This document shows positions 413 to 59,269 of a stretch of DNA of 64,000 bases, one piece after another. The DNA is taken from positions 62,001 to 126,000 of IMG/VR virus record IMGVR_UViG_3300032240_001991, one strand, 5' to 3'. Each line of letters begins with the position of its first letter. Position 1 is the first letter of the stretch. The notes under the pieces are model-generated. The model was not told the origin of the DNA. It searched no databases and saw only the letters and a program-made list of their open reading frames with translations. The position numbers were made by a program, and so were the translations under genes.

Positions 413-1572
413 GCGACTCGTAACAGTACTGTGTGCTCGTTAGTACGCGGTTTCATAGTGTGCTCCACGCCCTTGATCGCGTCAAACCACTTACGCAGTT
501 GATTCTTGCCCAGCTTCATAAACTCTGCCAGCTGAGTTTCGGGCTTACGCAGAGTCTTCTGTATGCAGCCTTTATTAGCAATGCCCACAAGACTGGTGCC
601 TTTAGCCATAATGCTCTTGTCAAATTCCCCACGATATACGCCCAGCTTGCGCCGCCGTACATCATAAACCCACACTTCTGAAGCACCCAAGACTTCTATG
701 GGCTTGATGCTGGTGATCTTGAGTTCCTTATGCTCCCCAAGATACTTGAGCTTGCGTACCAACTTAGCACGATCTACGGGTTTGGCCTTGCGTACACGAG
801 CCACTTTCTTTTCAATAGCCAAACGACCCGCACTGGCTTCACAGTCATCTAGAAACGCTATAGCAGCCTTAAGACTCTTGGCACTGACGAATCTGTAGCC
901 CTCTAAGAGCTGCTGTGTGCTGTTATCATGATCTCGGCTGGTACGAGCCTCCGCTAGTTCGCGAAGTTCCGCTGTAGACCCTGCTAGTGCTGCTGCCAGC
1001 TTCTTAAAGTGTATGGCACTAAAGCGAGCAAATCCTGTGATGTTAGCAGTCTTGCCTTCACGTACAACACCCCGTAGAATGCTGCCCACAATCTCTTCTA
1101 TTTCTATTACTGCTTGATTGACCTGCAGATCCATGCGTTCCTGCACCCCAATGCGCTCTGCAGGCTGCTGCTGTACAGCAGGAGTGTCTTCCGCTACTTC
1201 TACACGGCGTGCTGCAGACTCTGCTATACTAGACCATATGCGAGCCTGCTCAGAGTCTGTAATAGCAAAGCCTTTGACCTGCAGGCGTGCTAGATAGCTC
1301 ATGCTGGTGCTAAGATGTCGATCGCTAGCGCGTGCTAGGATCTTGAGATCTTGACCAGCAGATTCCCCACGATACAGCGTGATCCAGTCTTCAAAGAACC
1401 GTCGCGAGTCCTTGCTGTCACAGGCATAGTTATACCAGTTGAGTGCTCGTATCAAGAGCCCCATGCGTGTGGACTCTGTAACAGCAACACCTTCCCACTG
1501 AGGTTCATAGCCTCGCGTGTGTATAGTATCTGCTGATACCTTAAGATCGTAAGGTTTGAATGCTCGTGCCAT
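409..1572 (-). CDS. Conserved phage hypothetical protein (387 aa)
   Basis: Long ORF, 4-bp overlap with feoA, upstream promoter at 1636-1665; function not recognised. Confidence 0.8.
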   Translation of the reverse strand: MARAFKPYDLKVSADTIHTRGYEPQWEGVAVTESTRMGLLIRALNWYNYACDSKDSRRFFEDWITLYRGESAGQDLKILARASDRHLSTSMSYLARLQVKGFAITDSEQARIWSSIAESAARRVEVAEDTPAVQQQPAERIGVQERMDLQVNQAVIEIEEIVGSILRGVVREGKTANITGFARFSAIHFKKLAAALAGSTAELRELAEARTSRDHDNSTQQLLEGYRFVSAKSLKAAIAFLDDCEASAGRLAIEKKVARVRKAKPVDRAKLVRKLKYLGEHKELKITSIKPIEVLGASEVWVYDVRRRKLGVYRGEFDKSIMAKGTSLVGIANKGCIQKTLRKPETQLAEFMKLGKNQLRKWFDAIKGVEHTMKPRTNEHTVLLRVA

Positions 1573-1635
1573 AGTTAGTATACCTTGTTTAAAAACAGTC
1601 TAAAAAGACACCAAAAACTGTCTCTTTAGGCGGTT

Positions 1636-1665
1636 ATTTTACCACTATTTAGACCAAAAAGTCAA
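1636..1665 (-). promoter_or_regulatory. sigma70-type promoter with an overlapping TAAATA late element
   Basis: Minus strand TTGACT-18 nt-TAAAAT, with TAAATA inside the spacer. Confidence 0.55.
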
Positions 1666-1769
1666 GAAACTGAGCAAATTTTGGTAAAAAATAATTTGGT
1701 TGACAGTGGGGAAGAGAGGCATAGTTAAAATGGTGCCAACCAGTTTCCCCTCAAACCTCACCTCAAACC

Positions 1770-1952
1770 TCACCCCAAATCCGTTTTATAGCGAATGTGT
1801 ACAGCAAAGTCATAGGCTGCTTCAGGATCCAAACCTTTGGCTACAGCCCATCCCAGAGTCAAACTAAACCAATCTTGTTCGCTGTCTGGGTCAATTGCTA
1901 GTGCTCTATCGGAGCATTCGGTTTTGAACAGTTCGATCAATTGTTCGTTCAT
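1770..1952 (-). CDS. Hypothetical early protein
   Basis: ORF overlapping its upstream neighbour by 4 bp (ATGA-type coupling). Confidence 0.7.
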   Translation of the reverse strand: MNEQLIELFKTECSDRALAIDPDSEQDWFSLTLGWAVAKGLDPEAAYDFAVHIRYKTDLG

Positions 1953-2188
1953 TGGTTGCCCTCGGCCATGTCGTTAATAGCGGCCGCTGTTTGGATTCCC
2001 ATTCTGTAGCCTTCTCGAAAGGCCCGTTCTGCCACTGCTCTCACAGTGGCTCTAATGTTAATGACCAAGTCATAGCCCGGGTCGCCGGGCTCATGTGTTA
2101 GAGGATTGGCCAACTCTAACTCGTTAAGATAACTGTCAGTTAAGCCTTGGCCAACAGCCTCTAGATCATATCCAATTTTGATAGGCAT
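1949..2188 (-). CDS. Hypothetical early protein
   Basis: Directly downstream of promoter 2214-2242, with GCAAGGA RBS. Confidence 0.75.
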   Translation of the reverse strand: MPIKIGYDLEAVGQGLTDSYLNELELANPLTHEPGDPGYDLVINIRATVRAVAERAFREGYRMGIQTAAAINDMAEGNQ

Positions 2189-2213
2189 TTTCTAGTCCTT
2201 GCTGTGTCTGTGT

Positions 2214-2242
2214 ATTATAAACAGGTTTTACCGGTCTGTCAA
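2214..2242 (-). promoter_or_regulatory. Early promoter, perfect sigma70 consensus, with GGTAAAACC spacer box
   Basis: Minus strand TTGACA-gaccGGTAAAACCtgtt(17 nt)-TATAAT. Confidence 0.9.
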
Positions 2243-2245
2243 CCC

Positions 2246-2539
2246 TCAGTATGGACATCCGATCATGCCCGTGTTGTAGCGGTCCTGCATGATCTGATAG
2301 AATTCCTCAACTGCCGCTGTAGGGCTAATCTGGCGATGGCGCGGGCTGGCTAGGCGTCCTGCAGCCTTGGCGCGACCATAGGCCTTGTTGAAGTTGTCGT
2401 GGTAACTGCAACGAGCTACCGCATAATCGATACCGTCGGCCTTTTCAATAAAGGCCACAGTGGCCCCGCCACGGCTTTCAAGGCGGCCGTGAATGTCGCG
2501 CTCACGATAGTGAACATACTTGATCTTGGGCGTAGTCAT
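2246..2539 (-). CDS. Hypothetical early protein
   Basis: AAGGAG RBS and own promoter at 2577-2604. Confidence 0.75.
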   Translation of the reverse strand: MTTPKIKYVHYRERDIHGRLESRGGATVAFIEKADGIDYAVARCSYHDNFNKAYGRAKAAGRLASPRHRQISPTAAVEEFYQIMQDRYNTGMIGCPY

Positions 2540-2646
2540 TGGTCGATCTCCTTACTGTGTGTCTCTGTCTGCTGCTATTATAGCAGGTTTTACCTAACTG
2601 TCAAGAGCTAGGTAGTTTTTTTACGAGAACTACCAAACTCAAACCC

Positions 2647-3594
2647 TTACTTGGTGTTCAGGAAGGGAATCGGAGCACCTGCGTAGATATTCTGCGGCAG
2701 TTGACCGTTCCACGTCTTGGCCTTCTGCATCTCGACCTCAATGCGACGCAGTTCCAGCACATCCTTGTTCTGGGCCAGTGCAGCGTTCTGCACACGGAGT
2801 GCTTCAGCCTGGGCCTTGGCCACAGTCAAGTTAGCATAGGCCTCACCATCAGCAGTGGCCTTGGCCGCAGCAGCCTCGGCTTCTGCGATAGCGACCTTCT
2901 GCTTCTGCTCAGCCTCAACGGTCTTGAGCTTGTTCTCAGCAGCCAGGCGCAACTGCTCCTGCTCAACCTTGCTGTTGATGGCTCGCATATAACTATCCTG
3001 GAAGGCAAAGTTACGCATATCGATATTGATCACCTGGGCCCCATAGATAGCCAACTTGGCCTGCAGCGTGCTCTTAATGTCAGCAGACACCTGAGCTCGT
3101 TGTGCAATCAAGTCGGGGGCGGTATACTTGGCAGTCACAGCCTTAAACGCTTCCTGCGTGGCAGTCTGAACGTAACTGCTCAAGTCGCCATTGTGGCTGT
3201 ACTTCTCGTAGACTTCAGCAACCTTGTCAGTGGCAATGCTGTAGCGTACAGTAAGGTCAACGTGTACGGGCTGCTGATCGCTGGTGCTACCATCGGCCTT
3301 GTCAATAGAAGCAGTCTCAGCACGAATGCTGAAAATGTTCAACTTCTGCCAGGGCGGAAGGATTGCCAGGCCCTCAGCCTCAATGCCCACGATCTTACCA
3401 AACTGGGTAATGACGCCGCGGCTACCGGTGGGTACCGAAGCAAATGGGTTGGCCCATGCCAAAACCAGCACGCCAGCCACCGCTGCGGCCACATGGGTAA
3501 CGATCTTAGGTACGTTGACGTTGACGTCAGTGACTTCTTCGCCCATGCGATTGGTACGAGTGTTCTTAGTGAAATAACTGTCTGAAAATGACAT
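2647..3594 (-). CDS. SPFH/band-7/prohibitin family membrane protein
   Basis: N-terminal TM helix, VPTGSRGVITQFG, D..V..DLTVRY, coiled-coil AEAEA region, C-terminal W.G.LP. Confidence 0.9.
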   Translation of the reverse strand: MSFSDSYFTKNTRTNRMGEEVTDVNVNVPKIVTHVAAAVAGVLVLAWANPFASVPTGSRGVITQFGKIVGIEAEGLAILPPWQKLNIFSIRAETASIDKADGSTSDQQPVHVDLTVRYSIATDKVAEVYEKYSHNGDLSSYVQTATQEAFKAVTAKYTAPDLIAQRAQVSADIKSTLQAKLAIYGAQVINIDMRNFAFQDSYMRAINSKVEQEQLRLAAENKLKTVEAEQKQKVAIAEAEAAAAKATADGEAYANLTVAKAQAEALRVQNAALAQNKDVLELRRIEVEMQKAKTWNGQLPQNIYAGAPIPFLNTK

Positions 3595-3606
3595 GATATC
3601 GACCTC

Positions 3607-3852
3607 TTACTGGTAAAGTTCGTTGAAACGACGCAGGTCCACCGACAGTTTGTCAGTGGGCAAGTGCTCAGTGACTTCAAATACTTCACTGGTGCTTGCG
3701 GTAGTAATCACTGCAGGAGTGACCTGTGCAGTCTGAGTGGGCTTAGAGTGAAAGAAATAGTAACCTAGCCCAAACACAGTCATGCCTAACAGGGCAATAC
3801 CTGCTACCTTATTAAACTTCTCAAAAGAATCTTCTTTGATCGTAAACTGCAT
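3607..3852 (-). CDS. Small single-TM membrane protein
   Basis: Hydrophobic VAGIALLGMTVFGLGYYFF; GAGGAG RBS; promoter 3882-3909. Confidence 0.75.
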   Translation of the reverse strand: MQFTIKEDSFEKFNKVAGIALLGMTVFGLGYYFFHSKPTQTAQVTPAVITTASTSEVFEVTEHLPTDKLSVDLRRFNELYQ

Positions 3853-3912
3853 ATTGTCTGCTCCTCTGTCTTTGTCTGTGTAGTATAGCAGGTTTTACCA
3901 AAAAGTCAACCT

Positions 3913-4107
3913 TTAGGCCTTATCGAGTACACGAACAACGAGTTCCGTGCTCTTTACAGATTTAACCCGTTCCCATTTCTCTAGGATGTCATTTTTAGAA
4001 AAAGAACACTTCTTCTTGCGCCACTCTAGAAACTCTCGTGCCTCAATCCAGTAGACCGTTGAATCATCAACAGGGTCATACTCTTCAACCAATCGAAACT
4101 TAGCCAT
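3913..4107 (-). CDS. Hypothetical early protein
   Basis: GCAAGGAG leader; promoter 4137-4165. Confidence 0.75.
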   Translation of the reverse strand: MAKFRLVEEYDPVDDSTVYWIEAREFLEWRKKKCSFSKNDILEKWERVKSVKSTELVVRVLDKA

Positions 4108-4161
4108 TTCTCTTGCTCCTTGCTGTGTGTGCGGGTATTATACTAAGGTTTCACCAAAAAG

Positions 4162-4605
4162 TCAAGCCAATTCTTTCTTTGCCGCCCGCTTGCGAGGCAC
4201 GCCCTTCTTAGTGTAACGAACCATTCGAGCGTAACGATGCTGCCCCATCAAGATCTGGATACGACCTTCGAACCCGTCCTTAATAGGAACGTTCCCAGTT
4301 TCAATTTTGAAGTTGTTCTTGTCAAACCACTGAAGCCACTCGTAAAGTTCGGCTTCGGCTTCCTCACCGCGGCTCAATACTGCCACGCAGGGATGCTTAT
4401 GGTAGGCGTTCTCCGGACACCAAATGGCGCCATTCTTATCTGCTCGTTCGTAGTCCTCGTCGTACCATGCATAGTCTGGATAATTACCATCAACTACAAT
4501 TCCCACACAATGCCGTCCGATGCCTACTTCACCTTCAAGAGCCAGTTGACAGTTATTCTTAGCGGCCCACACTGCCATCCAGGTGATCTTCTCTTCATGC
4601 TTCAT
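4162..4605 (-). CDS. Hypothetical early protein (start refined to MKHEEK)
   Basis: AAGGAG RBS before ATG 4605; its stop TGA lies inside the next -35 element. Confidence 0.7.
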   Translation of the reverse strand: MKHEEKITWMAVWAAKNNCQLALEGEVGIGRHCVGIVVDGNYPDYAWYDEDYERADKNGAIWCPENAYHKHPCVAVLSRGEEAEAELYEWLQWFDKNNFKIETGNVPIKDGFEGRIQILMGQHRYARMVRYTKKGVPRKRAAKKELA

Positions 4606-4663
4606 TTTTCGCTCCTTTACACACTTGGGTTTTTCACACCAAGGGTGACGACTGTGAATATCG

Positions 4664-4867
4664 TTATTTCCCATGGGCTAATGACTCTTGAATTTCATTA
4701 ACCCAGCAACTGATGTCGCTGCTGCCGATCTCTTCAAAATCGTAGAGATAAGCGGCCTTTTCGTCGATAGCGTCTAAAAGACGACTGCCATACTCAACTA
4801 GGAGATCTATATGCTGGGTGCGTATACGATAGATGATGCAATCTTTAACTGCTTGACTGCTGCTCAC
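4664..4867 (-). CDS. Hypothetical early protein
   Basis: GCAAGGAG leader; promoter 4897-4926. Confidence 0.7.
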   Translation of the reverse strand: MSSSQAVKDCIIYRIRTQHIDLLVEYGSRLLDAIDEKAAYLYDFEEIGSSDISCWVNEIQESLAHGK

Positions 4868-4922
4868 GGTCTACTCCTTGCTGTGTGTATGAGGCTATTA
4901 TACTATGGTTTTACCAGTACTG

Positions 4923-5513
4923 TCAACCACTATGAGTCTTGAGAACGTCAATCAGGCTCTTGCTTAGGTCCCAGTGGCCCTTCAAAACCGCTTCGCAGGC
5001 CAGCTGGGAGATTCGATCCAGGAATTCCGTTTCTGAGGTGTGCTCTTGCACCAGCACACCCAGTCCCTTGAGTCGAGCCACCAGCTCAGGGTACCCCTCA
5101 GGGTGTTTGACGTAGCAGCCTTGCACATCGTCGTAGGCACGAGGGTCCACCGGCAACTGCTGTGGGCCCTGACGCTCGCTCACCTCTTTGGCTTCACGGA
5201 GACCCAGGTTGGCCAGCTCTCGCAGGGCCTTGATTCCGCTGACCTTGCGATTGCCCCATTCGGTGGGCATGGTTACAGTCACTTTGCTAGGTATCATAAC
5301 AAATCCTTTCTGAGGGAGGCTTCTGCTCAAATTAATGGGCTGCTTCAGAGCGTTACGAGCAATGTCCCGTGCAGCAACCACATCCGCGCGGGCCCACTCG
5401 TTGATGTCCTCGGCATAGTAGATCTTGCGTTCAATCTCAGACAGACTGGTCCGCAGTCGCTGGATTTCGGCTTGCAACAGGTCTTGATCGCTCACGTCTA
5501 CTCCTGTAAACAA
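4923..5513 (-). CDS. Protein with a ribosomal L7/L12 C-terminal-domain-like motif (alternative start at 5297)
   Basis: KVSGIKALRELANLGLREAKEVSE resembles the bL12 CTD KI.VIK.VR..TGLGLKEAK..VE; second RBS GAAAGGA before ATG 5297. Confidence 0.6.
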   Translation of the reverse strand: MFTGVDVSDQDLLQAEIQRLRTSLSEIERKIYYAEDINEWARADVVAARDIARNALKQPINLSRSLPQKGFVMIPSKVTVTMPTEWGNRKVSGIKALRELANLGLREAKEVSERQGPQQLPVDPRAYDDVQGCYVKHPEGYPELVARLKGLGVLVQEHTSETEFLDRISQLACEAVLKGHWDLSKSLIDVLKTHSG

Positions 5514-5543
5514 TAGCCCAGGGTCACATAACCCTGGCGCTCT

Positions 5544-5726
5544 TTATTGTTCGTGTACTATAGCAGGTTTTACCACAGGCGTCAACTGATTTTTTGCCTT
5601 AGGGCCCTTGTACCCCGTGCCCTTCTGATAGATCAACCACACATGGTCAGAGCAGTAACTGCGGTTCTGATAGCCGGGGCGGCCACACTTGGCCTGCCCC
5701 TCATCACGCCATTCACACTTGGGCAC
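5544..5726 (-). CDS. Small Cys/His-containing hypothetical protein
   Basis: C-x10-C-x9-C-x2-H pattern; follows the ATPase gene directly. Confidence 0.6.
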   Translation of the reverse strand: MPKCEWRDEGQAKCGRPGYQNRSYCSDHVWLIYQKGTGYKGPKAKNQLTPVVKPAIVHEQ

Positions 5727-5727
5727 G

Positions 5728-6591
5728 TTACACCCCCTTCTTCATGCAGGTCGTCTTAGCCATACCCTTCCACGCAGCAGGGAAGCTCTTCTTGAGGTCT
5801 GCAATCTTGAGCACCATACGCAGGCTGAGCTCGCGCAGTTGAGTAGAGTTAGTAGCGATGTAATCCAAAATCTCTGCCTTCTCTGCTTCTTCAAACTCGT
5901 ATTTCTGCAACATCCCATCGCCTACAATCTGACGAATACGCAGGAGTTTTTCTCGGTCCGTATCCATCTGCAGGTCAATGTAGTGGCAGCGACTTTCAAG
6001 TGCCATCAAGTGACTACGCAGTTTCTTAGAACGTACATACTCAAATTTGATGTTGGTGATAAAGATCGCAGCACCACAGAACTCAAAGCGGTCTGGAATG
6101 CCTTCGCTACGCAAGAGTCGGCTGTCCAAGTTCCAGCTGATGTAGCGGCGCTCAGAACTGTCTAGCGCACCCTTAAGGATATTGAGGCTCAACTGGTCCA
6201 TGAGCACATCGTCGCAGTCGTCAAAGACCACTACGTTACCCTTATCAGCGAACCCAAACAGTTTAGCATAGAGACCCAGAGCACTCATAGCACCCTTGAC
6301 AATCTCATACTTAGGCTTACGCTGAGCCAAGGTATTGAACAGGTCGTCCTTCTGCAGAACAGCCTCAACACCAAAACTCTTGCCTACGCCGGGCGGCCCG
6401 CTGACAATCATAGCCCGCACATCCCCATGCTTGACAGCACGGGTCATGTCATCTAGAATCTGGAAACGAGAACGCAGGCGCTCAAGAATCTCATCGTCAG
6501 TTTCGGCCTGCACCTCTTGTGCGCGGCGTGCGATTGCTTCTTGGTCAAAGTCAATTACATTCTCAATCTTGGTAGTAGCGGTTCGAGCCAT
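5728..6591 (-). CDS. AAA+ family P-loop ATPase
   Basis: Walker A GPPGVGKS, Walker B VVVFDDCD, arginine-finger region ALESRC. Confidence 0.9.
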   Translation of the reverse strand: MARTATTKIENVIDFDQEAIARRAQEVQAETDDEILERLRSRFQILDDMTRAVKHGDVRAMIVSGPPGVGKSFGVEAVLQKDDLFNTLAQRKPKYEIVKGAMSALGLYAKLFGFADKGNVVVFDDCDDVLMDQLSLNILKGALDSSERRYISWNLDSRLLRSEGIPDRFEFCGAAIFITNIKFEYVRSKKLRSHLMALESRCHYIDLQMDTDREKLLRIRQIVGDGMLQKYEFEEAEKAEILDYIATNSTQLRELSLRMVLKIADLKKSFPAAWKGMAKTTCMKKGV

Positions 6592-6644
6592 TAGGTCACC
6601 TCTGTATATTTAAGACTGTATTATACTGAATTTTTGGTAAAAAG

Positions 6645-7004
6645 TCAATCCATGCGTGAGCCAACACTGGCATCAAGCCCCTGGCTTTTCAGTACCTTAG
6701 CGAACGCATCAGCATAGGCTTCTTTGAGCTCCATGCTCTGATTGCCCTCGTGAACCCAGTATTGCAGCCCCGGCTGGCTGTAACTCTTTTGGAATCCCTG
6801 CTCAGTCAAGCGGCGTCCTACCCGGCTGTTGCTACGGACCCCACGGATATTGACCCAAGCAAACCCACAAGGGCCTCCGGGTACCGTCCACCGATGCTGG
6901 CCGTCAGTGACCACCATGGGTTGAGGATTAGCAGCCTGAAGAGCAGCCATGCCCTGACGGTGCGCTTCTGCAAGAACTTCGTCGATATTCTGTTCAGTTA
7001 CCAT
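6645..7004 (-). CDS. Conserved phage hypothetical protein (start refined to MVTEQ)
   Basis: GCAAGGAG RBS before ATG 7004; promoter 7033-7061. Confidence 0.75.
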   Translation of the reverse strand: MVTEQNIDEVLAEAHRQGMAALQAANPQPMVVTDGQHRWTVPGGPCGFAWVNIRGVRSNSRVGRRLTEQGFQKSYSQPGLQYWVHEGNQSMELKEAYADAFAKVLKSQGLDASVGSRMD

Positions 7005-7047
7005 GTATATGCTCCTTGCTGTCAGTGTGCGTATACTAGCACAGGTT

Positions 7048-7359
7048 TTACCAGCCGTCAACCGGTCGCAGTCCGCTGATTACTCCTGCTTGGCTTAGTG
7101 TATCTTTTACACGGTTAAGGGCAGAACCACTATGGCCCCCAACGTGCCAGGCATAGAGACCCTTGGGAGTTTCGTCTTCCTTCCAATCGTAGATAGTGGC
7201 CACAGTACCATCTGCATACCGTAGTACCCACCCTACCGTAATCTTGTCCCCGCCCATAACATCCGGAGGACCAAATATCGCTACCAGTTGATCATAGGTA
7301 GCAGTAACGTATCCCACAAGGCTAGTGCCGGTGCCTTCGGCGTCTTTAGTAAACTTCAT
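7048..7359 (-). CDS. Conserved phage hypothetical protein
   Basis: GCAAGGAG RBS; promoter 7386-7414; ATIYDWK...W.VGG motif. Confidence 0.75.
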   Translation of the reverse strand: MKFTKDAEGTGTSLVGYVTATYDQLVAIFGPPDVMGGDKITVGWVLRYADGTVATIYDWKEDETPKGLYAWHVGGHSGSALNRVKDTLSQAGVISGLRPVDGW

Positions 7360-7410
7360 CTGGATCTCCTTGCTAGTGTTCGCGTACTATAGCACAGGTT
7401 TTACCAAAAG

Positions 7411-7623
7411 TCAAACTTCGTTGGCGTCTACATCCAGTTCTGTTTCGTCTTGGACATAGTCATAGGCCGAGGTCAATTCTTGATCAAAATCCCATTCACT
7501 TGTTTCTGCACAGTAGTGAATGATGTCTGCGATAAGATCTGCCGGACGAGTATAATTCTCGTTATTAAGGAACATCTGGGCCACTCGACCCACTGCCTGC
7601 TGGCGAAAAGTAAGATAGGTCAT
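7411..7623 (-). CDS. Hypothetical early protein
   Basis: GAGGAG RBS; acidic C-terminus. Confidence 0.7.
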   Translation of the reverse strand: MTYLTFRQQAVGRVAQMFLNNENYTRPADLIADIIHYCAETSEWDFDQELTSAYDYVQDETELDVDANEV

Positions 7624-7647
7624 TATCGCTCCTCAAGTCAAACGTAG

Positions 7648-7672
7648 GGGGGTGCAGTTGCCTACACCCCCC
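7648..7672 (-). terminator. GC-rich stem-loop, probable terminator
   Basis: GGGGGTG-cagttgccta-CACCCCC immediately after the stop at 7679. Confidence 0.5.
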
Positions 7673-7678
7673 AGTGGA

Positions 7679-7882
7679 TTAGCCCACCAGCGCGTTGTTA
7701 CGCACGGTGTTGCTAACGCGGCCGTACAGCCCATCGGCCGCCTTCTCCGAGATCTCCTTGCGGAGACCGCCCGACGCCGTTCCGTTGCCGCTCAACATAC
7801 GCGCCACAGCACGGATGCTGCGGAACTTGTAGGTCAGGCCCGAGTTCGGAAAGGTCACATCGATCGTTACATTGCGCTTCAT
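7679..7882 (-). CDS. Small basic hypothetical protein
   Basis: AAGGAGAG RBS; promoter 7926-7954. Confidence 0.7.
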   Translation of the reverse strand: MKRNVTIDVTFPNSGLTYKFRSIRAVARMLSGNGTASGGLRKEISEKAADGLYGRVSNTVRNNALVG

Positions 7883-7969
7883 TTCAACTCTCCTTAAGTT
7901 ACTAGCACCTTGCTAGTATGTCGTTACTATAACACCGTCTAATGACTGTGTCAACCTTTTTTTACCAAA

Positions 7970-8614
7970 TCAGTGAGCGTAGTAGCCCACGTTCTCAACA
8001 CTCTCATCCCAACAGGCACGGCACGAGCCGCACTCATTGTCCTGGAAACGGCTTGGGCAATCATACCCATGCGCTTCGCTGTTCTTGTGCACGGTGCTGG
8101 TGTGCGTCCACCCCTTGGGCGGCTCAGCATCAATCATCTGTGCACTCATACGAATTACAAGGTTCTTAGGCCGAGTATACTGCCTTAGGAACTCTCGCAC
8201 AATACCAAACTCACGGGTAGGCAACCAATGGTCGATCCAGGGCGTCAATTCAGCCACGCGAGCAATCATCATAAGATGCTTCACGCTCTGCAGGTCCCCA
8301 CTGTCGTGCCAGCGAAAGTATTCTTCATTCTGCATCAATTTGACCATTGCACTGACCCACGAGTCCTCTGTAAGAGTGTCGTGTAGGGCTTCTACGAGCG
8401 TCGTGTAGCGGCGATCGTGAGCGGCCACTGTGCTCTTCCAAGTGTAAGCACCTTTGAGTGCGTAGCACTTAAAGCAGACGCTGCCCTCAACCAATCGTAG
8501 TTTGCTGCCAGTATGACATTTCTTAGCACTGAAGCCAAAACTCTTGCCTGGCATCTTAGAAGGCTCACTCAATCCTCCTACGAACTCTCCTGCTGCTGCC
8601 TTGGTCTTGAACAT
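7970..8614 (-). CDS. Gp88-like protein (Cys-rich)
   Basis: C..GSKL....SVC..CYA, FRWHDSGD, WLPTRE, C-terminal C.SC.ACW; typical of the mycobacteriophage gp88 family. Confidence 0.75.
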   Translation of the reverse strand: MFKTKAAAGEFVGGLSEPSKMPGKSFGFSAKKCHTGSKLRLVEGSVCFKCYALKGAYTWKSTVAAHDRRYTTLVEALHDTLTEDSWVSAMVKLMQNEEYFRWHDSGDLQSVKHLMMIARVAELTPWIDHWLPTREFGIVREFLRQYTRPKNLVIRMSAQMIDAEPPKGWTHTSTVHKNSEAHGYDCPSRFQDNECGSCRACWDESVENVGYYAH

Positions 8615-8671
8615 TTCTGCTCCTTGCTAGTGTTCGTGTACTATAACACAGGTTTTACCAAAGGTCAACCA

Positions 8672-8857
8672 CTAACTATTCCAAGGAACGGTTCTCACGG
8701 TAACGCCGTCCCTGTCTGTTTCATAGAGGCCGGCTTCGTGTATGATGTATTGATCTTGAAAATGATCAAACTCTAGATCTGCACGATCCTTGGCCTCCTC
8801 TTCGGTACAGTCCGGAAGATCTACTTCTACTTGGATACGCATCATGTACTTAGGCAT
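8672..8857 (-). CDS. Hypothetical early protein
   Basis: Small acidic ORF in the early cassette. Confidence 0.6.
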   Translation of the reverse strand: MPKYMMRIQVEVDLPDCTEEEAKDRADLEFDHFQDQYIIHEAGLYETDRDGVTVRTVPWNS

Positions 8858-8941
8858 TAGAACCCCTCAGGAAGATAGCCCGTAAGCCGCTCTATCGCTT
8901 CAACTAACGAAAACCCCATCTCTTTACGCATATTATTCTCC

Positions 8942-9295
8942 TTAATCAGAACTGTCAACATCGTTGATCTGACCGCAATGAACACACTCATAGCGATTGT
9001 AGCAACGTCCAAGATTCATCGTCCGCACCCACTCATGCCCAGAGCACTTCGCAGCAATGGCCTCAGTCACATAGCCATGTCCGTAGCAGTGACTACACGC
9101 ACAGGTGAAGTGTCTGTAGCGATGCCGATTCTCTGGAGTGTCAGGTCTACCGTGTAGACTGTAGGAGTTGAGACTGAGATTCCAACCACCATACCCACGA
9201 CACTTTGGGCACTCTACGATGTAATCATACAGAGGTTCCTTGCGCGAGAAGTCCACGAAGGCATCTGGATGATCTGGCGTAAGAAAGTCTGACAT
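8942..9295 (-). CDS. Zn-finger protein with DnaJ-type CxxCxGxG repeats
   Basis: CPKCRGYGG and CSHCYGHG plus CVHCG; GCAAGGAG RBS; promoter 9325-9352. Confidence 0.75.
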   Translation of the reverse strand: MSDFLTPDHPDAFVDFSRKEPLYDYIVECPKCRGYGGWNLSLNSYSLHGRPDTPENRHRYRHFTCACSHCYGHGYVTEAIAAKCSGHEWVRTMNLGRCYNRYECVHCGQINDVDSSD

Positions 9296-9348
9296 ATGTT
9301 ACTCCTTGCTCTAACTATGCGACTATTATAGCAGGTTTTACCAAAAAG

Positions 9349-9972
9349 TCAACCTTCGTATTCACCTTCTGGATCAATCCCATGTTTATTGAGATCGATC
9401 TCTAAATTCTCTTCATCATCCCCGTCCTCATCTTCATACTCTGCCTGCTCGCGTTCGTACTCTTCAATCTGCTCGGAGATACAGAAACGTTCGTCCAGTT
9501 CAGTAATCTGTTCACGGACCTGGTCAGCAGTCCATCCGCTATAGTCTACGGAATTATCTCCTTCACTGTTAGTAAAGGTTCCTGCAAATTGCATACCTTG
9601 TTCATGATAGTAGGCTTCAACTTCAAAGCCCTGCTTTACCATATACTCAAAGAAAGCAATAGGTGGCCCCCATGCACTGTCAAAGAAGAGTTCGATGAGA
9701 TCAACTTCTTCATTGATGATGCGGGCGTCAACATCCCACTTGATTCCCCAGTTCTTGCATTGCCAACTATACCAGTCTGGAGCACCGTACTTCTCAATGA
9801 ACTCAGTGGCTCGCTGCCCTTCCCATTCGGGCGAACAATATTCATGCAACTCTGCAGGGCAAGGCAAGAACTCGTTGAATAATCGGTCGGCCTTGACGCC
9901 AGTCTTGACTCGCAAGATCATAGCCGGGTCCTTGTGGGTAAAGGTCACGTGATTCGCGCACCAATTTGGCAT
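9349..9972 (-). CDS. DUF1281/YubB-like ferredoxin-fold protein
   Basis: MPNWCAN, DWYSWQCKNWGIKWD, FDSAWGPP, YYHEQG motifs. Confidence 0.85.
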   Translation of the reverse strand: MPNWCANHVTFTHKDPAMILRVKTGVKADRLFNEFLPCPAELHEYCSPEWEGQRATEFIEKYGAPDWYSWQCKNWGIKWDVDARIINEEVDLIELFFDSAWGPPIAFFEYMVKQGFEVEAYYHEQGMQFAGTFTNSEGDNSVDYSGWTADQVREQITELDERFCISEQIEEYEREQAEYEDEDGDDEENLEIDLNKHGIDPEGEYEG

Positions 9973-10025
9973 TTAAAATTCCTCTTGTTAGTGTCTGTGT
10001 ACTATAGCAGAGGTTTTACCAATTG

Positions 10026-10211
10026 TCAACCTCTCATTAGGTCAAAGATGCTTCGTTGTAGATCTGCCAGTTCATCATGCGGAACATAAAAGTCTGTTCT
10101 AGGATCCCAGTACTCGCCCTCTTTGGGATCATAGTACAAGACCCTGCCGTTGGGATACTGGAAGGGGCCTTCCAACCCCTTCCTGGGCCCATAGTCTTTA
10201 GAGAGGGCCAT
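10026..10211 (-). CDS. Conserved phage hypothetical protein (start refined to MALSK)
   Basis: GLEGPF.YPNGRVLYYDPKEGEYWDP.TD motif. Confidence 0.7.
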   Translation of the reverse strand: MALSKDYGPRKGLEGPFQYPNGRVLYYDPKEGEYWDPRTDFYVPHDELADLQRSIFDLMRG

Positions 10212-10362
10212 TGACGCGCCGGTCAAGTGCGGCACCCCAACCAGCAAAGGCTACCACCCATGCAATAGAAGCACTAGAGTCACCCAAATACCAGTTGATA
10301 AGAAAAAGAATCAGCGTTGATGCCACTAGGCCAAATTCAAGAAAAGTAAGATACCGTTTCAT
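10198..10362 (-). CDS. 54-aa two-TM membrane protein (not in the ORF track)
   Basis: Manual translation MKRYLTFLEFGLVASTLILFLINWYLGDSSASIAWVVAFAGWGAALDRRVNGPL; AAGGAG RBS. Confidence 0.6.
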   Translation of the reverse strand: MKRYLTFLEFGLVASTLILFLINWYLGDSSASIAWVVAFAGWGAALDRRVNGPL

Positions 10363-10448
10363 AAGAACTCCTTAAGAATGGCAGTTTTTTCTGTAGTGCT
10401 GCCAACTGCGGTCTATACTTATATAGCGCCTGTCCTCGCGCTTCCGGA

Positions 10449-10781
10449 TTAGGCTGCGTCGCGCAGGCGATAAATCACGCCCGTCGCAGTCTCCACAATG
10501 TCAACATCGCTGTTGGCAGCGTACCAGTCAAAGTTACGGACCTTGGTGCTGTCACGCTCCCAGTCGGTAGGACCTTCAACCTTGACCGCAAGCCACTTCT
10601 TGCGGATGTTGAAGAACACGCGACGTCCTGGGTAGACTTCGCGAACACGTTCAGCAAAGTGTTCACCGCCCTTGATGTAAGAGTCGGGCCAAAGCCGGCG
10701 GTTCTCGCGGCTCTTGTTGACGGCGTCCACGTAGGCGCCCACGCGATCAGATGCAAACCAGTTTTCAGTACGCTTGAACAT
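10449..10781 (-). CDS. Hypothetical early protein
   Basis: AAGGAG RBS; promoter 10821-10849. Confidence 0.75.
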   Translation of the reverse strand: MFKRTENWFASDRVGAYVDAVNKSRENRRLWPDSYIKGGEHFAERVREVYPGRRVFFNIRKKWLAVKVEGPTDWERDSTKVRNFDWYAANSDVDIVETATGVIYRLRDAA

Positions 10782-10857
10782 TTTTCGCTCCTTTTGCTAG
10801 CACCTTGCTAGCGTGCCAATACTATAACAAAGGTTTTACCAACTGTCAACCATTAAA

Positions 10858-11190
10858 AAAATGCATTCTCCCTGCTGGCGGTATTTTCCATTCACCACAA
10901 ACAATTATGTGGTATCCGCTGCCCAACACAGGGAGACTGTCGTGCTGCTAACGCCCGTTTGGTTTGACGGCAGTATTGCTACTGGAGACCATTGACCACT
11001 CACCTTGCGGTGGATAGGCTGTTCTCAAACCACCCGTAGATGTCACTCTACTTCTATCGTGCGGGTCACACTAGCCGCTAACTAGGCGGCGTGTTCAGTA
11101 AAGATTGGTTGGAAAGATTCGTCAAAATCTATCTTCGCCAGTTGACGCTGACCGCCCAAACCTGGGCGCCAATCTTAAATCGTTTAACTT
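10858..11190 (-). ncRNA. Candidate large structured ncRNA A (about 330 nt), family not recognised
   Basis: No ORF of 60 aa or more in 10782-11234; own promoter 11197-11225; at least eight helices including two GCAA tetraloop hairpins; ends in a U-tract. Confidence 0.65.
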
Positions 11191-11234
11191 GGGTCTAGCA
11201 TAACAATTTTACCAAACCCTGTCAACCAAATTGT

Positions 11235-11480
11235 TTACTCTTCTACCGCAATGACAGAATCCTTGCGGAAACTGCGCCATCCGGCCTTTTCCACATCCCA
11301 AACGCTGACCACATCGGGATTAGGAACTCGAGCCTGCCCCGTGCCAGTGCTGGGCGGCAAACGGCTTTCCTGCAGAGTGCAACGAAGATTCCGTACTGTG
11401 CCATCGCTCTTAGTAAAGCGAACAGTACGCTCACCCAAACGTAGGTCATTCAGCAACTGATCAAAATTGATCTTAGTCAT
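11235..11480 (-). CDS. DUF2693/WYL_2-like SH3 beta-barrel protein
   Basis: V.FTKSDGTVRNLRCTL...VWDVEKAGWRSFR motif; AAGGAG RBS; promoter 11505-11533. Confidence 0.75.
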   Translation of the reverse strand: MTKINFDQLLNDLRLGERTVRFTKSDGTVRNLRCTLQESRLPPSTGTGQARVPNPDVVSVWDVEKAGWRSFRKDSVIAVEE

Positions 11481-11539
11481 ATAGATACTCCTTATTGAGC
11501 CGCCACTATAGCATCAAGAGGGCCTGCTGTCAATTTCTT

Positions 11540-11875
11540 CTTAATTGGGAGTGGGGGTGGACCCCATGTGGTTCCTGAGCAGGTGTCTGTTGACGCGCCC
11601 AGACAAGATTCTGCTCATATATAAGAGTGTGGAGCCGCTGGCTATGGGTGTACCGCGGCTCCCTCCACGACTTTCTGGGATCGAAATCCGCCCTAGACCT
11701 CTGATGTGGGTAGTCGTCTCAGCATTATCGCACCCGGTACACAAGATCTTCCTAATCTTCCGCCGGACTGTTATCCAGCCCGCAACTATGTTGACCAGTT
11801 AGGTCCGGACCTACCCTAGCGATTATCAGCATCCTAGGTCAGCTTTGGACTTCACTTTCTGCTTGGAGTTTTAAC
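11540..11875 (-). ncRNA. Candidate large structured ncRNA B (about 335 nt), family not recognised
   Basis: Starts just after TAAATA (11881-11886); nine or more helices, a UUCG loop, a 7-8 bp pseudoknot; only RBS-less shadow ORFs overlap it. Confidence 0.6.
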
Positions 11876-11892
11876 AAAAGTATTTAACCAGT

Positions 11893-11976
11893 TGGTGCGA
11901 GTGGAGGGATTCGAACCCTCAAGCCGTTGGGCGGCAGATTTTAAGTCTGCTGTGTATACCGTTCCACCACACTCGC
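11893..11976 (-). tRNA. trnL: tRNA-Leu(UAA)
   Basis: GCGAGTG acceptor, anticodon arm GCAGA-CTTAAAA-TCTGC, long variable arm, GGTTCGAATCC T-arm, encoded CCA. Confidence 0.97.
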
Positions 11977-12012
11977 ATATCATACAGTAATTATATATTC
12001 TAAATCTAAATA

Positions 12013-12142
12013 GTCCTAGCCTCGGTTTACTATTCTCTTGCTACCTGATGCAGATGCTTACAGCATCATTTACTAGTATCACAGGCTACCCGCTTCGAAC
12101 AAGGTTAGGTTTGTACTCAACCCGACGAGCCGAGGCTAGGAC
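12013..12142 (-). ncRNA. Candidate 130-nt RNA with 13-bp paired ends inside the tRNA operon
   Basis: GTCCTAGCCTCGG (12013-12025) is the exact reverse complement of CCGAGGCTAGGAC (12130-12142); internal GATGCT-tac-AGCATC hairpin. Confidence 0.6.
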
Positions 12143-12147
12143 ATAAT

Positions 12148-12223
12148 TGGTGGGCCCTCAGGGATTCGAACCCTGAACCAAAGGATTATGAGTCCTCTGC
12201 TCTAACCGTTGAGCTAAAGGCCC
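12148..12223 (-). tRNA. trnI: tRNA with CAU anticodon, probably tRNA-Ile2 (lysidine type) rather than Met
   Basis: 76 nt, GGGCCTT/GAGGCCC-like acceptor ending GGGCCCACCA, anticodon arm GAGGA-CTCATAA-TCCTT, encoded CCA; lacks the initiator GGG/CCC anticodon stem and 1:72 mismatch. Confidence 0.9.
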
Positions 12224-12243
12224 GTGTATATTATTACAGCGGG

Positions 12244-12251
12244 GTATTTAT
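12244..12251 (-). promoter_or_regulatory. T4-type late promoter TATAAATA driving the tRNA/ncRNA cluster
   Basis: Exact TATAAATA on the minus strand about 20 nt upstream of the tRNA(CAU) 5' end. Confidence 0.7.
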
Positions 12252-12253
12252 AA

Positions 12254-12394
12254 TTAACACTCCGTAAGATAGTGATATTCACGCCCTGGAAATTGTGCTT
12301 CGATTAGCCTCTTAGCATCCCAATAGTCTCGAGCCTGCAGCTCATAATCAACTGATCTTCCGTCTATCATCAGTGTACAACGATACCTACGCAT
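12254..12394 (-). CDS. 46-aa hypothetical protein (not in the ORF track)
   Basis: MRRYRCTLMIDGRSVDYELQARDYWDAKRLIEAQFPGREYHYLTEC; promoter TTGACA-17-TATACT at 12426-12454; GAGAG RBS. Confidence 0.65.
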   Translation of the reverse strand: MRRYRCTLMIDGRSVDYELQARDYWDAKRLIEAQFPGREYHYLTEC

Positions 12395-12485
12395 ATATGT
12401 ACTCTCTATCTGTTAGTGTCTGCATAGTATAGGGTCAGATCAGTAAGTTGTCAACAGTGGCCTAAATATATACAGCGGGGTATTA

Positions 12486-13202
12486 CTAGGTACGCCCTGC
12501 CCTTACTACATCTATAAAGAAGTTACCCTGTTTAATTTTATATCCGTTAGATATGATTTGATAGGCTAGTAGTGTCTCTGAGTGCGGAGTTAGTCCTTTC
12601 GATATAAATTCGTTAAAATGATTAACAGAGTCAGTGTACAGTCGCATACCGTTTGAAGATGATACAGCAAAGGATGAGTTGATTTGATAACCGTTATGAC
12701 CATGACCTATGTTGCTATCAGTAACTATAGTGTTAGGGTCACGAGATATAACATCATTAACTTCTCTAAGATCTAAAGGTGTGCCTTTTACTCCCGCATC
12801 AGGACGAGCTCTGATCACAAGGTCGTACTCACCGTGAGTTTTTTCATACTCTTGTCTAAGTAAATCAGATTGGTGTAGACTGGTATAATGCATCCAAAGT
12901 CTAAAGTCAGTAACAGATCGGTTATGCGGACTGATGTGAGGGAAGTTTTCCATATCATCAAGTTTGAGTACTACCAGTCTATGTCCTGCTGGTAACCCTT
13001 TTTCTATTTTGGATAAGGTACTTTGGTAGTCTAAGGTATCACTCCATTCGGGTAACATTAGAGAAGTATCACCGTCAACAATATTGTTTCTCCATAGATA
13101 AACGAACCAATCTATTTGATCAGCGCCAACGATGTTTTTACAAAAGAAATCAAACTCTCTGCAGAATCTGGGTTGACCTGCAATAATTCCTGCAACTTTC
13201 AT
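12486..13202 (-). CDS. Putative glycosyltransferase-related protein
   Basis: N-terminal AGIIAGQPR and YDLVIRARPD motifs, as seen in phage and giant-virus glyco-gene families; TAAATA upstream. Confidence 0.5.
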   Translation of the reverse strand: MKVAGIIAGQPRFCREFDFFCKNIVGADQIDWFVYLWRNNIVDGDTSLMLPEWSDTLDYQSTLSKIEKGLPAGHRLVVLKLDDMENFPHISPHNRSVTDFRLWMHYTSLHQSDLLRQEYEKTHGEYDLVIRARPDAGVKGTPLDLREVNDVISRDPNTIVTDSNIGHGHNGYQINSSFAVSSSNGMRLYTDSVNHFNEFISKGLTPHSETLLAYQIISNGYKIKQGNFFIDVVRAGRT

Positions 13203-13239
13203 GTCTTGTACCTTTAGTTTTATTTAATGCTCTAATAGA

Positions 13240-13268
13240 TTGACTGCTGAAAAAACCTTTGCTATAGT
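13240..13268 (+). promoter_or_regulatory. Early sigma70 promoter at the strand switch
   Basis: TTGACT-17 nt-TATAGT, with a GAAAAAACC variant of the box in the spacer. Confidence 0.75.
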
Positions 13269-14968: not shown

Positions 14969-15005
14969 ACTAATAGATAGTAATTACAGCGGGGTATTAC
15001 CCGCA

Positions 15006-15282: not shown

Positions 15283-15316
15283 TCGCGTAAATTAAAATTA
15301 CAGCGGGGTTTTACGT

Positions 15317-59139: not shown

Positions 59140-59234
59140 GATCTAGAAGGGAGTAAACTTGCGTAGCGAGTTGTTATAGTGAAAGGCTATAAGTCTAAAC
59201 GAAGGAAAAACAAGGCCCTTTGGAGTTCGTTAGG
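59140..59234 (+). ncRNA. Candidate structured RNA upstream of tmRNA
   Basis: After TAAATA 59129-59134; two hairpins plus crossing pairings GAAGGG/CCCTTT and CTAAACGAA/TTCGTTAG. Confidence 0.4.
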
Positions 59235-59263
59235 TTGACAACATTCCTAAATTGTTGTATAGT
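59235..59263 (+). promoter_or_regulatory. sigma70 promoter of tmRNA
   Basis: TTGACA-17 nt-TATAGT. Confidence 0.8.
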
Positions 59264-59269
59264 TTTTTT

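What the first reader, a model, noticed from the sequence alone, without database searches (positions are those of the whole stretch)
12013..12142. 130-nt paired-end RNA embedded between two tRNAs
Seen: perfect 13-bp terminal stem, starting 5 nt after the CCA of the CAU tRNA and ending 36 nt before tRNA-Leu; internal hairpins and a GUUCGAAG T-loop-like segment. Known: the T4 tRNA cluster releases stable non-tRNA species (rnaC/rnaD), and Y/YrlA RNAs have paired ends and a tRNA-like domain. Inference: a stable RNA released by tRNA processing, possibly a tRNA mimic or nuclease decoy.
Basis: partly seen in the sequence, partly recalled or inferred. Interest (0 to 1): 0.6.

Follow-up and report, generated by a model that had tools for sequence, protein, structure and literature searches.

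The report
Helix-closed small RNA inside phage tRNA operon
The 130-base stretch between two tRNA genes of this very large phage is a real, conserved structured RNA gene of an undescribed family that is probably cut out of the tRNA transcript; what it does is unknown.

Summary
On the minus strand (the tRNA strand), a perfect 13-bp helix closes a 104-nt core. It starts 5 nt after the CCA of tRNA(CAU) and ends 36 nt before tRNA-Leu(UAA). The window alone is weak evidence: the core folds no better than shuffles, and about two such inverted repeats per genome arise by chance.

The decisive result is a homolog in another huge-phage contig (L086). It fills the spacer between tRNA-Leu(UAG) and tRNA-Ser(GCU) exactly. 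The core is 78% identical. The closing helix has an unrelated sequence but still pairs (16 bp). All 12 substitutions in paired core columns form 6 compensatory pairs (39 pairs, 100% paired, 14 compensatory in all). G·U pairs and consensus energy favour the tRNA strand.

No Rfam family matches, ARAGORN finds no tRNA, and the record holds no Ro60 gene. The "T-loop" is not conserved and more likely pairs elsewhere, so tRNA or Y-RNA mimicry is unsupported.

The element belongs to a wider class: 10 of 89 unique inter-tRNA spacers have closing helices of 10 or more (0.45 expected). Related phages carry different cores at one locus.

Best reading: a new RNA family, analogous to T4 RNAC/RNAD, released by tRNA processing. 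Expression is untested and function unknown.

The parts
12426..12454 (-). sigma-70-type promoter-like site (TTGACA, 17 nt, TATACT), the likely start of the transcription unit
   Evidence: 11 of 12 matches. Relatives L041, L042 and L046 have a like promoter before the homologous small gene. Function is inferred.
12254..12394 (-). 46-aa small ORF, first gene of the unit
   Evidence: E 2e-7 to the 52-aa protein at the same place in relative L041
12233..12247 (-). motif ATACCCCGCTGTAAT, 9 nt upstream of the tRNA(CAU) gene (11 nt by ARAGORN's start); unknown signal
   Evidence: four good copies, all on the minus strand, at 12247, 12483, 14997 and 15311
12148..12223 (-). tRNA with anticodon CAU, CCA encoded
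12143..12147 (-). 5-nt A/U linker (AUUAU) between the CCA and the element
12013..12142 (-). the RNA element itself, 130 nt (alignment columns 1-130; column n = 12143-n)
12130..12142 (-). P1 5' strand (columns 1-13)
   Evidence: In L086 a 16-bp helix of unrelated sequence takes its place.
12013..12025 (-). P1 3' strand (columns 118-130)
12104..12126 (-). P2 hairpin (columns 17-39), with conserved GUACA in its loop
   Evidence: 6 pairs, 2 with compensatory double changes
12092..12102 (-). P3 5' strand (columns 41-51).
   Evidence: pairs with columns 102-113; 50/103 changes G-C to C-G
12030..12041 (-). P3 3' strand (columns 102-113)
12080..12085 (-). P4 5' strand (columns 58-63), invariant
12044..12050 (-). 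P4 3' strand (columns 93-99), invariant
12068..12079 (-). 12-nt internal loop AUACUAGUAAAU (columns 64-75), identical in both homologs; candidate binding site
   Evidence: The binding role is inferred.
12053..12067 (-). P5 hairpin (columns 76-90). The apical CUGUAAG is conserved; the outer pairs covary.
   Evidence: 3 of 6 pairs with compensatory double changes
11977..12012 (-). 36-nt A/U-rich linker (5 G+C of 36 by direct count; both linkers together 12% GC) between the element and tRNA-Leu
11893..11976 (-). tRNA-Leu(UAA), CCA encoded
   Evidence: The orthologous tRNA-Leu is 86-88% identical in relatives L041-L048.

Best explanation
It is a gene for a small structured non-coding RNA of a family not yet described, carried in the tRNA arrays of a group of very large (over 300 kb) phages. 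It is transcribed with its neighbouring tRNAs, here probably from the sigma-70-type promoter at 12454-12426. It folds into a long closing helix (P1) that holds a three-way junction: a short hairpin (P2) and a long arm (P3-P4-P5) with conserved internal loops. The enzymes that mature the flanking tRNAs set it free. RNase P cutting at the 5' end of the downstream tRNA defines or approaches its 3' end. RNase P acting on the acceptor-like closing helix, or RNase E plus exonuclease trimming in the A/U linkers, defines its 5' end. The closed ends then shield it from exonucleases, so it should persist as a species of about 130 nt. Its invariant unpaired nucleotides suggest that it acts in trans by binding a partner, most likely a protein. 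Shown: conserved sequence and structure with compensatory changes, the strand, the position in inter-tRNA spacers, and the existence of a wider class. Inferred: co-transcription, the processing route, stability, and any trans-acting function. The confidence given is for the whole chain; by my own estimate, that it is a genuine conserved structured RNA is about 0.85, release by tRNA processing about 0.6, and a trans-acting role through a protein partner about 0.35.
For: Homolog and covariation. L086:1872-2007 lies in tRNA sense between tRNA-Leu(UAG) and tRNA-Ser(GCU). Core identity is 78%. All 12 substitutions in paired core columns fall into 6 pairs that stay Watson-Crick. P1 differs in sequence at 9 of 13 aligned pairs yet is fully paired. 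The whole model has 39 pairs, 100% paired, 14 compensatory; 0 of 500 shuffles reach this, and slid controls give 0-1. RNAalifold recovers P1, P2, P4 and P5 independently.
Strand. G.U pairs at 20/36, 41/113 and 43/111 in both sequences, and at 11/120 in L086, would be C.A on the antisense strand. Consensus energy is -44.1 sense against -37.8 antisense.
Processing geometry. The L086 helix abuts the CCA (0 nt) and G1 (1 nt) of its neighbours. In the window's precursor, P1 forms with p>=0.92 while both tRNAs fold.
Class. 10 of 89 unique inter-tRNA spacers have closing helices >=10 (0.45 expected) and 7 have >=12 (0.1 expected). A second family (type B) also shows a conserved hairpin with compensatory changes under different closing helices and between different tRNAs.
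Precedent. T4 RNAC/RNAD are small stable RNAs from the tRNA region with unknown roles (PMC3014915, PMC9697503).
Against: There are no expression data. The one run that holds the phage is DNA kept as contigs, and those contigs break inside the tRNAs. Only two full members are known, plus one partial, non-retrievable match in run X3, so the covariation rests on one pairwise comparison. The different P1 might reflect insertion of the core into a resident hairpin rather than compensatory evolution. The closest relatives of this locus (L041-L048) lack both the element and the tRNA(CAU), so it is dispensable in that lineage. Substitution rates are similar in unpaired (11/52) and paired (12/52) core columns, so the loops are not markedly more conserved than the stems. 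No complementary target stands out in the phage genome. No partner protein is identified.
Confidence: 0.6

Rival explanations
1. A passive processing or insulating spacer. Only the closing helix matters: it presents the neighbouring tRNA ends to RNase P, keeps adjacent tRNAs from misfolding, or blocks exonucleases. The interior is filler without a function of its own.
For: Closing helices are strongly enriched in inter-tRNA spacers whatever the interior. At one locus, related phages keep the outer helix but carry three unrelated interiors. The window's interior has no excess folding energy. The element is absent from the nearest relatives.
Against: The interior is kept at 78% identity between phages whose proteins are 36-73% identical. 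Every substitution in its helices is compensated. A 12-nt internal loop and the apical CUGUAAG are invariant. Filler would not keep a fold.
Confidence: 0.2
2. A miniature inverted-repeat mobile DNA element (MITE-like) inserted into an A/T-rich tRNA spacer. The 13-bp arms would be terminal inverted repeats for a transposase, and any RNA fold is incidental.
For: The terminal inverted repeat is perfect and 13 bp long. The trinucleotide ATA flanks both ends. GC jumps from 12% to 49% exactly at the ends. Removing the element and one ATA would leave a 38-nt A/T-rich spacer (read). The element is absent from relatives of the locus and sits in a different tRNA spacer in L086.
Against: The pattern is the reverse of a MITE: between the two homologs the terminal repeats are unrelated in sequence while the interior is conserved. 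Internal helices show compensatory changes, and the G.U pairs work only on the tRNA-sense RNA. The genome holds a single copy. No copy with the same arms exists in IMG/VR, JGI metagenomes or 185,579 species genomes. In L086 and other class members the helix starts exactly at the tRNA 3' end, which suits RNA processing better than DNA insertion.
Confidence: 0.08
3. A tRNA mimic of the Y-RNA/YrlA kind that works with a Ro60-like protein, or a decoy that presents a tRNA-like arm to a host nuclease.
For: The ends are paired and the length is about 130 nt, as in Y RNAs (PMC4201824). The window copy has GUUCGAAG. The apical CUGUAAG of P5 resembles a tRNA-Tyr anticodon loop. That resemblance was noticed after the fact.
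Against: The record has no TROVE/Ro60 gene. There is no YrlA, Y RNA or tRNA hit on the element at E<=10. ARAGORN finds nothing on the element at relaxed thresholds in its standard tRNA mode; its mitochondrial mode gave two calls that overlap it, read here as false positives of a model that does not apply. The T-loop-like segment is not conserved and pairs elsewhere. In P5, C and G close the loop further to a GUA triloop. The phage's own tRNA-Tyr anticodon arm is unrelated.
Confidence: 0.04
4. A chance inverted repeat in an ordinary spacer.
For: Shuffled genomes give about two inverted repeats of 13 bp or more with loops up to 300 nt. The interior has no excess stability.
Against: A homolog with a conserved core, a different but intact closing helix and compensatory changes exists in another phage.
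Confidence: 0.01

Closest known systems
Phage T4 RNAC and RNAD (species 1 and 2 RNAs) of the tRNA region
   Same: They are small (139 and 119 nt) non-tRNA RNAs encoded on the tRNA strand inside a phage tRNA cluster. They sit almost flush with a tRNA: rnaD lies 1 nt after tRNA-Arg. They accumulate as stable species and their function is still unknown (PMC3014915, PMC9697503).
   Different: Model R1 gives no hit on the T4 locus L010, so there is no sequence or model similarity. T4 rnaC carries a canonical T-arm and only a short terminal pairing, and rnaD has no closing helix. The present RNA has a 13-19 bp closing helix, no tRNA arm, and lies between two tRNAs rather than at the end of the cluster.
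Bacterial Y RNAs / YrlA (Rfam RF02553)
   Same: They are 80-130 nt with a long stem formed by the 5' and 3' ends, and some are phage-encoded (PMC4201824).
   Different: YrlA is defined by a neighbouring Ro60 gene, a GNCGAAN0-1G motif and tRNA-like D and T arms. None of these is found here.
Functional by-products of bacterial tRNA transcripts (the 3' external transcribed spacer of leuZ, an sRNA sponge)
   Same: These are spacer RNAs released by tRNA processing that act in trans (10.1101/2021.04.25.441314).
   Different: They are short, largely unstructured, Hfq-dependent base-pairing RNAs of the host. The present RNA is a compact folded molecule of a phage, and no complementary target was found.
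Long-helix substrates of RNase P (precursor 4.5S RNA; phage P1/P7 C4 RNA), recalled from my own knowledge
   Same: A long terminal helix stands in for the acceptor/T-stem stack and lets RNase P define the 5' end.
   Different: This is a resemblance only. No cleavage was tested, and there is no 3' RCCA after the helix.

Membership tests
YrlA / bacterial Y RNA | Encoded next to a Ro60 (TROVE) gene | tested here: not met
   PF05731 has no match at E<=1 in the 326,658-bp record, while the controls ring. Caveat: CheckV rates the record as incomplete.
YrlA / bacterial Y RNA | Match to the Rfam models for YrlA or Y RNA | tested here: not met
   No hit on 12013-12142 at the gathering score or at E<=10.
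YrlA / bacterial Y RNA | Conserved GNCGAAN0-1G motif and tRNA-like T and D arms (PMC4201824) | tested here: not met
   The window has GUUCGAAG and the homolog GUUCAAAC. The T-arm pairing is 87.5% paired with no covariation. The alternative pairing with columns 102-113 is 100% paired with one compensatory change.
YrlA / bacterial Y RNA | Long stem formed by the 5' and 3' ends; length 80-130 nt | tested here: met
   13 bp here and 16 bp in L086; 130 nt.
Phage tRNA-cluster stable RNAs (T4 RNAC/RNAD kind) | Non-tRNA RNA gene inside a phage tRNA transcription unit, same strand, close to tRNA ends | tested here: met
   T4 layout.
Phage tRNA-cluster stable RNAs (T4 RNAC/RNAD kind) | Homology to rnaC or rnaD | tested here: not met
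   R1 finds nothing in the T4 locus L010. blastn of the element against 50,697 phage records finds nothing.
Phage tRNA-cluster stable RNAs (T4 RNAC/RNAD kind) | Accumulates as a discrete stable RNA during infection | not testable with these tools
   The only holder of the phage is a DNA run kept as contigs. The RNA runs listed hold only tRNA-like words.
tRNA / tRNA-like gene | Cloverleaf recognised by ARAGORN or Rfam RF00005 | tested here: not met
   No call on the element by ARAGORN's standard tRNA mode at default or relaxed (80%) thresholds, with introns allowed. Its mitochondrial mode gave two overlapping calls, taken as false positives. No RF00005 hit at E<=10.
MITE (miniature inverted-repeat transposable element) | Terminal inverted repeats | tested here: met
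   13 bp, perfect.
MITE (miniature inverted-repeat transposable element) | Target-site duplication | tested here: inconclusive
   ATA lies on both sides. Three bases in A/T-rich flanks are easily a chance match.
MITE (miniature inverted-repeat transposable element) | Several copies sharing the terminal repeats; the repeats more conserved than the interior | tested here: not met
   Single copy in the genome. No pair of these arms in three collections. The homolog keeps the interior and has unrelated arms.
RNase P long-helix substrate | Cleavage by RNase P at the 5' base of the closing helix | not testable with these tools
   Geometry only: the helix starts 0 nt (L086) or 5 nt (window) after the upstream CCA.

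The most novel reading that the evidence does not exclude
Huge phages carry a repertoire of exchangeable, helix-closed RNA cassettes in their tRNA arrays. RNase P matures them like tRNAs. They act as decoys or sponges against host RNA-directed defences, for example tRNA-cleaving nucleases or RNA-binding sensors. Cassette turnover at a fixed locus (types A, B and C between tRNA-Leu and tRNA-Ser) would reflect an arms race.
Probability: 0.1. Interest if true: 0.85.

Novelty: new variant of a known kind. Interest (0 to 1): 0.6.

Why it matters
Non-tRNA RNAs in phage tRNA clusters have been known since T4 species 1 and 2, and their function is still unknown half a century later. Here is an unrelated family with covariation support, from uncultured huge phages. 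There is also evidence that helix-closed RNAs are a common, diverse and exchangeable component of large-phage tRNA arrays. No Rfam family matched any that were tested, and the three families searched have no match in the cultured-phage collection. This turns a T4 curiosity into a general feature that can be studied comparatively. Genome annotators now treat these stretches as empty spacers or call spurious ORFs in them. It also gives a simple testable idea: a long closing helix acts as a tRNA-like processing and stability module for passenger RNAs.

Tried and rejected
- Rfam at gathering and permissive thresholds on the element and on other helix-closed spacers: only tRNAs and chance hits.
- ARAGORN with introns and lowered thresholds: nothing on the element in its standard tRNA mode.
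- TROVE/Ro60 in the genome: none.
- blastn of the element against phage and plasmid collections: chance hits only. blastn of the L086 copy and of two other spacer families against phages: nothing.
- Exact searches for the arm pair in IMG/VR, JGI metagenomes and species genomes, and for a 22-mer of the core in all three: nothing. Only a 19-mer of the core gave the L086 homolog.
- Searches anchored on the tRNA(CAU) and tRNA-Leu sequences gave 65 loci, none with the element.
- Xanthomonas phage Xoo-sp13 has Leu and Met tRNAs side by side, but a small ORF lies between them.
- Relatives of the 238-aa neighbour have another context.
- Logan contig L050, which seemed to show a variant without the element, is an assembly chimera inside tRNA-Leu: its 5' and 3' acceptor halves do not match.
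- Retron-like RNA, invertible promoter and small ORF were considered and dropped. No promoter-like site lies inside the element. The only internal ORF is 32 aa on the plus strand, reads through the right arm of the helix, and has no evident Shine-Dalgarno sequence by eye.
- A 'foreign GC island' ending at the element was dropped: relatives share the same GC gradient.
- A search for complementary targets of the conserved loops in the phage genome was at chance level.
- Read laying was given 651 letters.

Full report
Setting. The window is bases 62001-126000 of a 326,658-bp IMG/VR virus record. The record carries 30 tRNA genes and a permuted tmRNA. It is a very large phage with no close cultured relative. 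All genes from about 400 to 13200 lie on the minus strand.

The observation. ARAGORN and Rfam place tRNA(CAU) at 12223..12148 and tRNA-Leu(UAA) at 11976..11893, both on the minus strand and both with CCA encoded. Between them lie 171 nt. These are a 5-nt linker, a 130-nt unit closed by a perfect 13-bp helix (arms at 12130-12142 and 12013-12025), and a 36-nt linker.

- The unit is 49% GC and the linkers are 12% GC.
- Folded in the 331-nt precursor, the helix forms with probability 0.92-1.0 and both tRNAs take their cloverleaves.

The window alone gives weak statistics.

- The whole unit folds better than shuffles (z -3.5 sense, -5.1 antisense), but the interior does not (z +0.39 and -0.33).
- Shuffled genomes contain 0-4 inverted repeats of this size and span.
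- The unit is single-copy in the genome.
- No Rfam family matches it at E<=10.
- ARAGORN's standard tRNA mode finds nothing on it, even with introns allowed and relaxed thresholds.
- The record has no TROVE/Ro60 gene.

Context of the locus. A strong sigma-70-type promoter (12454-12426) precedes a 46-aa ORF, the tRNA(CAU), the element and tRNA-Leu. Further such promoters drive the small genes downstream. I found relatives of this region through the WYL_2-like 81-aa gene at 11235-11480.

- They share the small ORF (E 2e-7), tRNA-Leu(UAA) at 86-88% identity, the 81-aa gene and a 110-aa gene.
- Between the small ORF and tRNA-Leu they carry a 57-aa ORF and a promoter, not the tRNA(CAU) and the element. 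The element is therefore not a fixed part of this locus.
- The GC step at about 12 kb is shared by these relatives, so it is not a recent island.

Finding a homolog. Searches for the arm pair, for a 22-mer of the core, and blastn against phages and plasmids all found nothing. Laying contigs of four runs gave three results.

- The phage itself is in run X1. There the contigs break in the tRNAs, and one contig is a chimera.
- Small-share runs hold only tRNA-like words.
- One 260-nt contig of a crustacean-associated metagenome (X3) matches 12025-12085 at about 87%.

A 19-mer from that stretch then hit one IMG/VR contig, L086 (11,756 nt, 15 tRNAs, rated 3% complete). Its proteins are 36-73% identical to proteins of the main tRNA region of the window's phage, so the two phages are distant kin.

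In L086 the homolog lies in tRNA sense at 1872-2007. It fills the whole spacer between tRNA-Leu(UAG) and tRNA-Ser(GCU). Its closing helix begins directly after the CCA and ends one base before G1.

Structure. I aligned the 13 inner base pairs of each closing helix together with the cores (A2).

- The core is 78% identical.
- The closing helix has an unrelated sequence (9 of 13 aligned pairs differ) yet is fully paired. In L086 it is 16 bp, with one G.U that would be C.A on the other strand.
- RNAalifold predicts P1, a hairpin P2, and a long arm P3-P4-P5.
- On this model all 39 pairs are paired in both sequences and 14 show changes on both sides. None of 500 shuffles reaches this, and slid controls give 0-1.
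- Within the core, all 12 substitutions in paired columns form 6 compensatory pairs: 2 in P2, 1 in P3 and 3 in P5.
- A 12-nt internal loop and the apical CUGUAAG of P5 are invariant.
- G.U pairs and the consensus energy (-44.1 against -37.8) favour the tRNA-sense strand.

The segment read as a T-loop is GUUCAAAC in L086. As a T-arm it loses a pair and shows no covariation. As part of P3 it is fully paired, with a G-C to C-G exchange at 50/103. I therefore do not read it as a T-loop, though two sequences cannot settle this.

Applying the differences listed for X3 to P5 gives five of six pairs kept, with two pairs changed. This is my own reconstruction and is only tentative.

A wider class. Model R1 finds only these two copies in the phage genome, in 49 other records and in all fetched loci. 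Close relatives of L086, which share a 93%-identical glycosyltransferase-like neighbour, hold something else in the same Leu(UAG)-Ser(GCU) spacer. They keep the outer part of the closing helix but have unrelated interiors of 172 nt (type B) or 195 nt (type C).

Type B recurs in other contigs under a different closing helix and between tRNA-Glu and tRNA-Lys. Its conserved hairpin carries compensatory changes.

Seven score 12 or more (0.1 expected). Most of these helices start exactly at the upstream tRNA's 3' end. One has a 17-bp closing helix plus a canonical T-arm. No Rfam family matched any of the spacers tested, and the three families searched have no match in the cultured-phage collection.

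Mechanism. Shown: a conserved fold on the tRNA strand, always in an inter-tRNA spacer but between different tRNAs, with ends set at or near tRNA ends.

Inferred from established knowledge of bacterial tRNA maturation (RNase P at 5' ends; RNase E cuts in A/U-rich spacers followed by 3' exonuclease trimming): the RNA is made as part of the tRNA precursor and released by these enzymes.

- In L086, no single-stranded nucleotides lie between the CCA and the helix. The simplest route there is RNase P cutting at the base of the helix as it does on long-helix substrates, which would also make the upstream tRNA's 3' end.
- In the window, the A/U linkers would allow RNase E cuts and trimming back to the helix.
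- Closed ends should make the product stable.

The invariant loops suggest a specific partner. None is identified, and no complementary target stands out in the genome.

Comparison with known systems.

- The nearest known things are T4 RNAC and RNAD. They have the same genomic niche, size and unknown function (PMC3014915, PMC9697503), but no similarity and a different architecture.
- YrlA/Y RNA membership fails on the neighbouring Ro60 gene, the model match and the motif (PMC4201824).
- A MITE reading fails because the terminal repeats differ while the interior is kept, and because no other copies exist.

Limits.

- The comparison rests on two full sequences.
- There is no transcript evidence.
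- The unrelated P1 could be a resident hairpin that received the core, rather than the product of compensatory evolution.
- The sample of spacers is biased towards contigs that share a tRNA-Leu or tRNA(CAU) word with this phage.

Verdict. The finding is real and more interesting than its single-sequence statistics suggest. It is a new, covariation-supported RNA family in huge-phage tRNA arrays and part of a broader class of helix-closed inter-tRNA RNAs. The tRNA or Y-RNA mimic idea is not supported. The function is open.

Noticed in passing
window 12233-12247, 12469-12483, 14983-14997, 15297-15311 (minus strand): The 15-nt motif ATACCCCGCTGTAAT has four good copies (two exact, one with 1 mismatch, one with 2), all on the minus strand. 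Each lies just downstream of a gene end, and one lies 9 nt before the tRNA(CAU) gene. Two weaker copies lie at genome positions 54899 and 61846. It is not a hairpin and not sigma-70-like. It could be a phage-specific promoter, a processing site or a protein-binding site.
   Followed up: partly
L086:1872-2007, L088:3724-3895, L093:1403-1597, L094:1225-1396: The same spacer before tRNA-Ser(GCU) in closely related phages keeps the outer closing helix (UUAGUUG.../...CAACUAA) but holds three unrelated interiors. This looks like cassette replacement at a fixed site. The mechanism of exchange is unexplained.
   Followed up: partly
L021:5681-5774: A 94-nt inter-tRNA RNA has a 17-bp closing helix and a canonical T-arm (GAGGUUCGAAUCCUC). 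It is a tRNA-like member of the helix-closed class that tRNA finders do not call.
   Followed up: no
window 12148-12223: The CAU tRNA has C4-G69 and C5-G68 and is nearly identical to bacterial tRNAs that flank prophage ends in IMG/VR. It may be a lysidine-type tRNA-Ile2 captured from a proteobacterial host rather than a tRNA-Met.
   Followed up: no
window 10821-13268: A cluster of near-consensus sigma-70 promoters (TTGACA, 17 nt, TATAGT or TATACT, often with TG) sits before small genes. The region has 45-50% GC in a 37% GC genome. Related contigs show the same GC gradient, so this is probably a host-RNA-polymerase early region.
   Followed up: partly
window 11534-11892 (minus strand): A 359-nt G+C-rich stretch without a convincing ORF lies directly downstream of tRNA-Leu. 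Its folding z-score is only -1.8 and it has no Rfam hit. Relatives have a non-homologous stretch there, ending in a hairpin with compensatory changes.
   Followed up: partly
window 59234-59629: A phage-encoded permuted tmRNA gene (tag peptide ANDDVYAMELAA) matches the permuted and betaproteobacterial Rfam models. This gives a hint to the host.
   Followed up: no
genome 318631-320067 (outside the window): There are several copies of the palindrome GGTCCAATTGGACC, spaced 50-230 nt apart.
   Followed up: no
L002:1589-1771 (Xanthomonas phage Xoo-sp13): A 60-aa ORF with a Shine-Dalgarno sequence is annotated in the 204-nt spacer between tRNA-Leu and tRNA-Met. So not all long inter-tRNA spacers are RNA genes.
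   Followed up: partly
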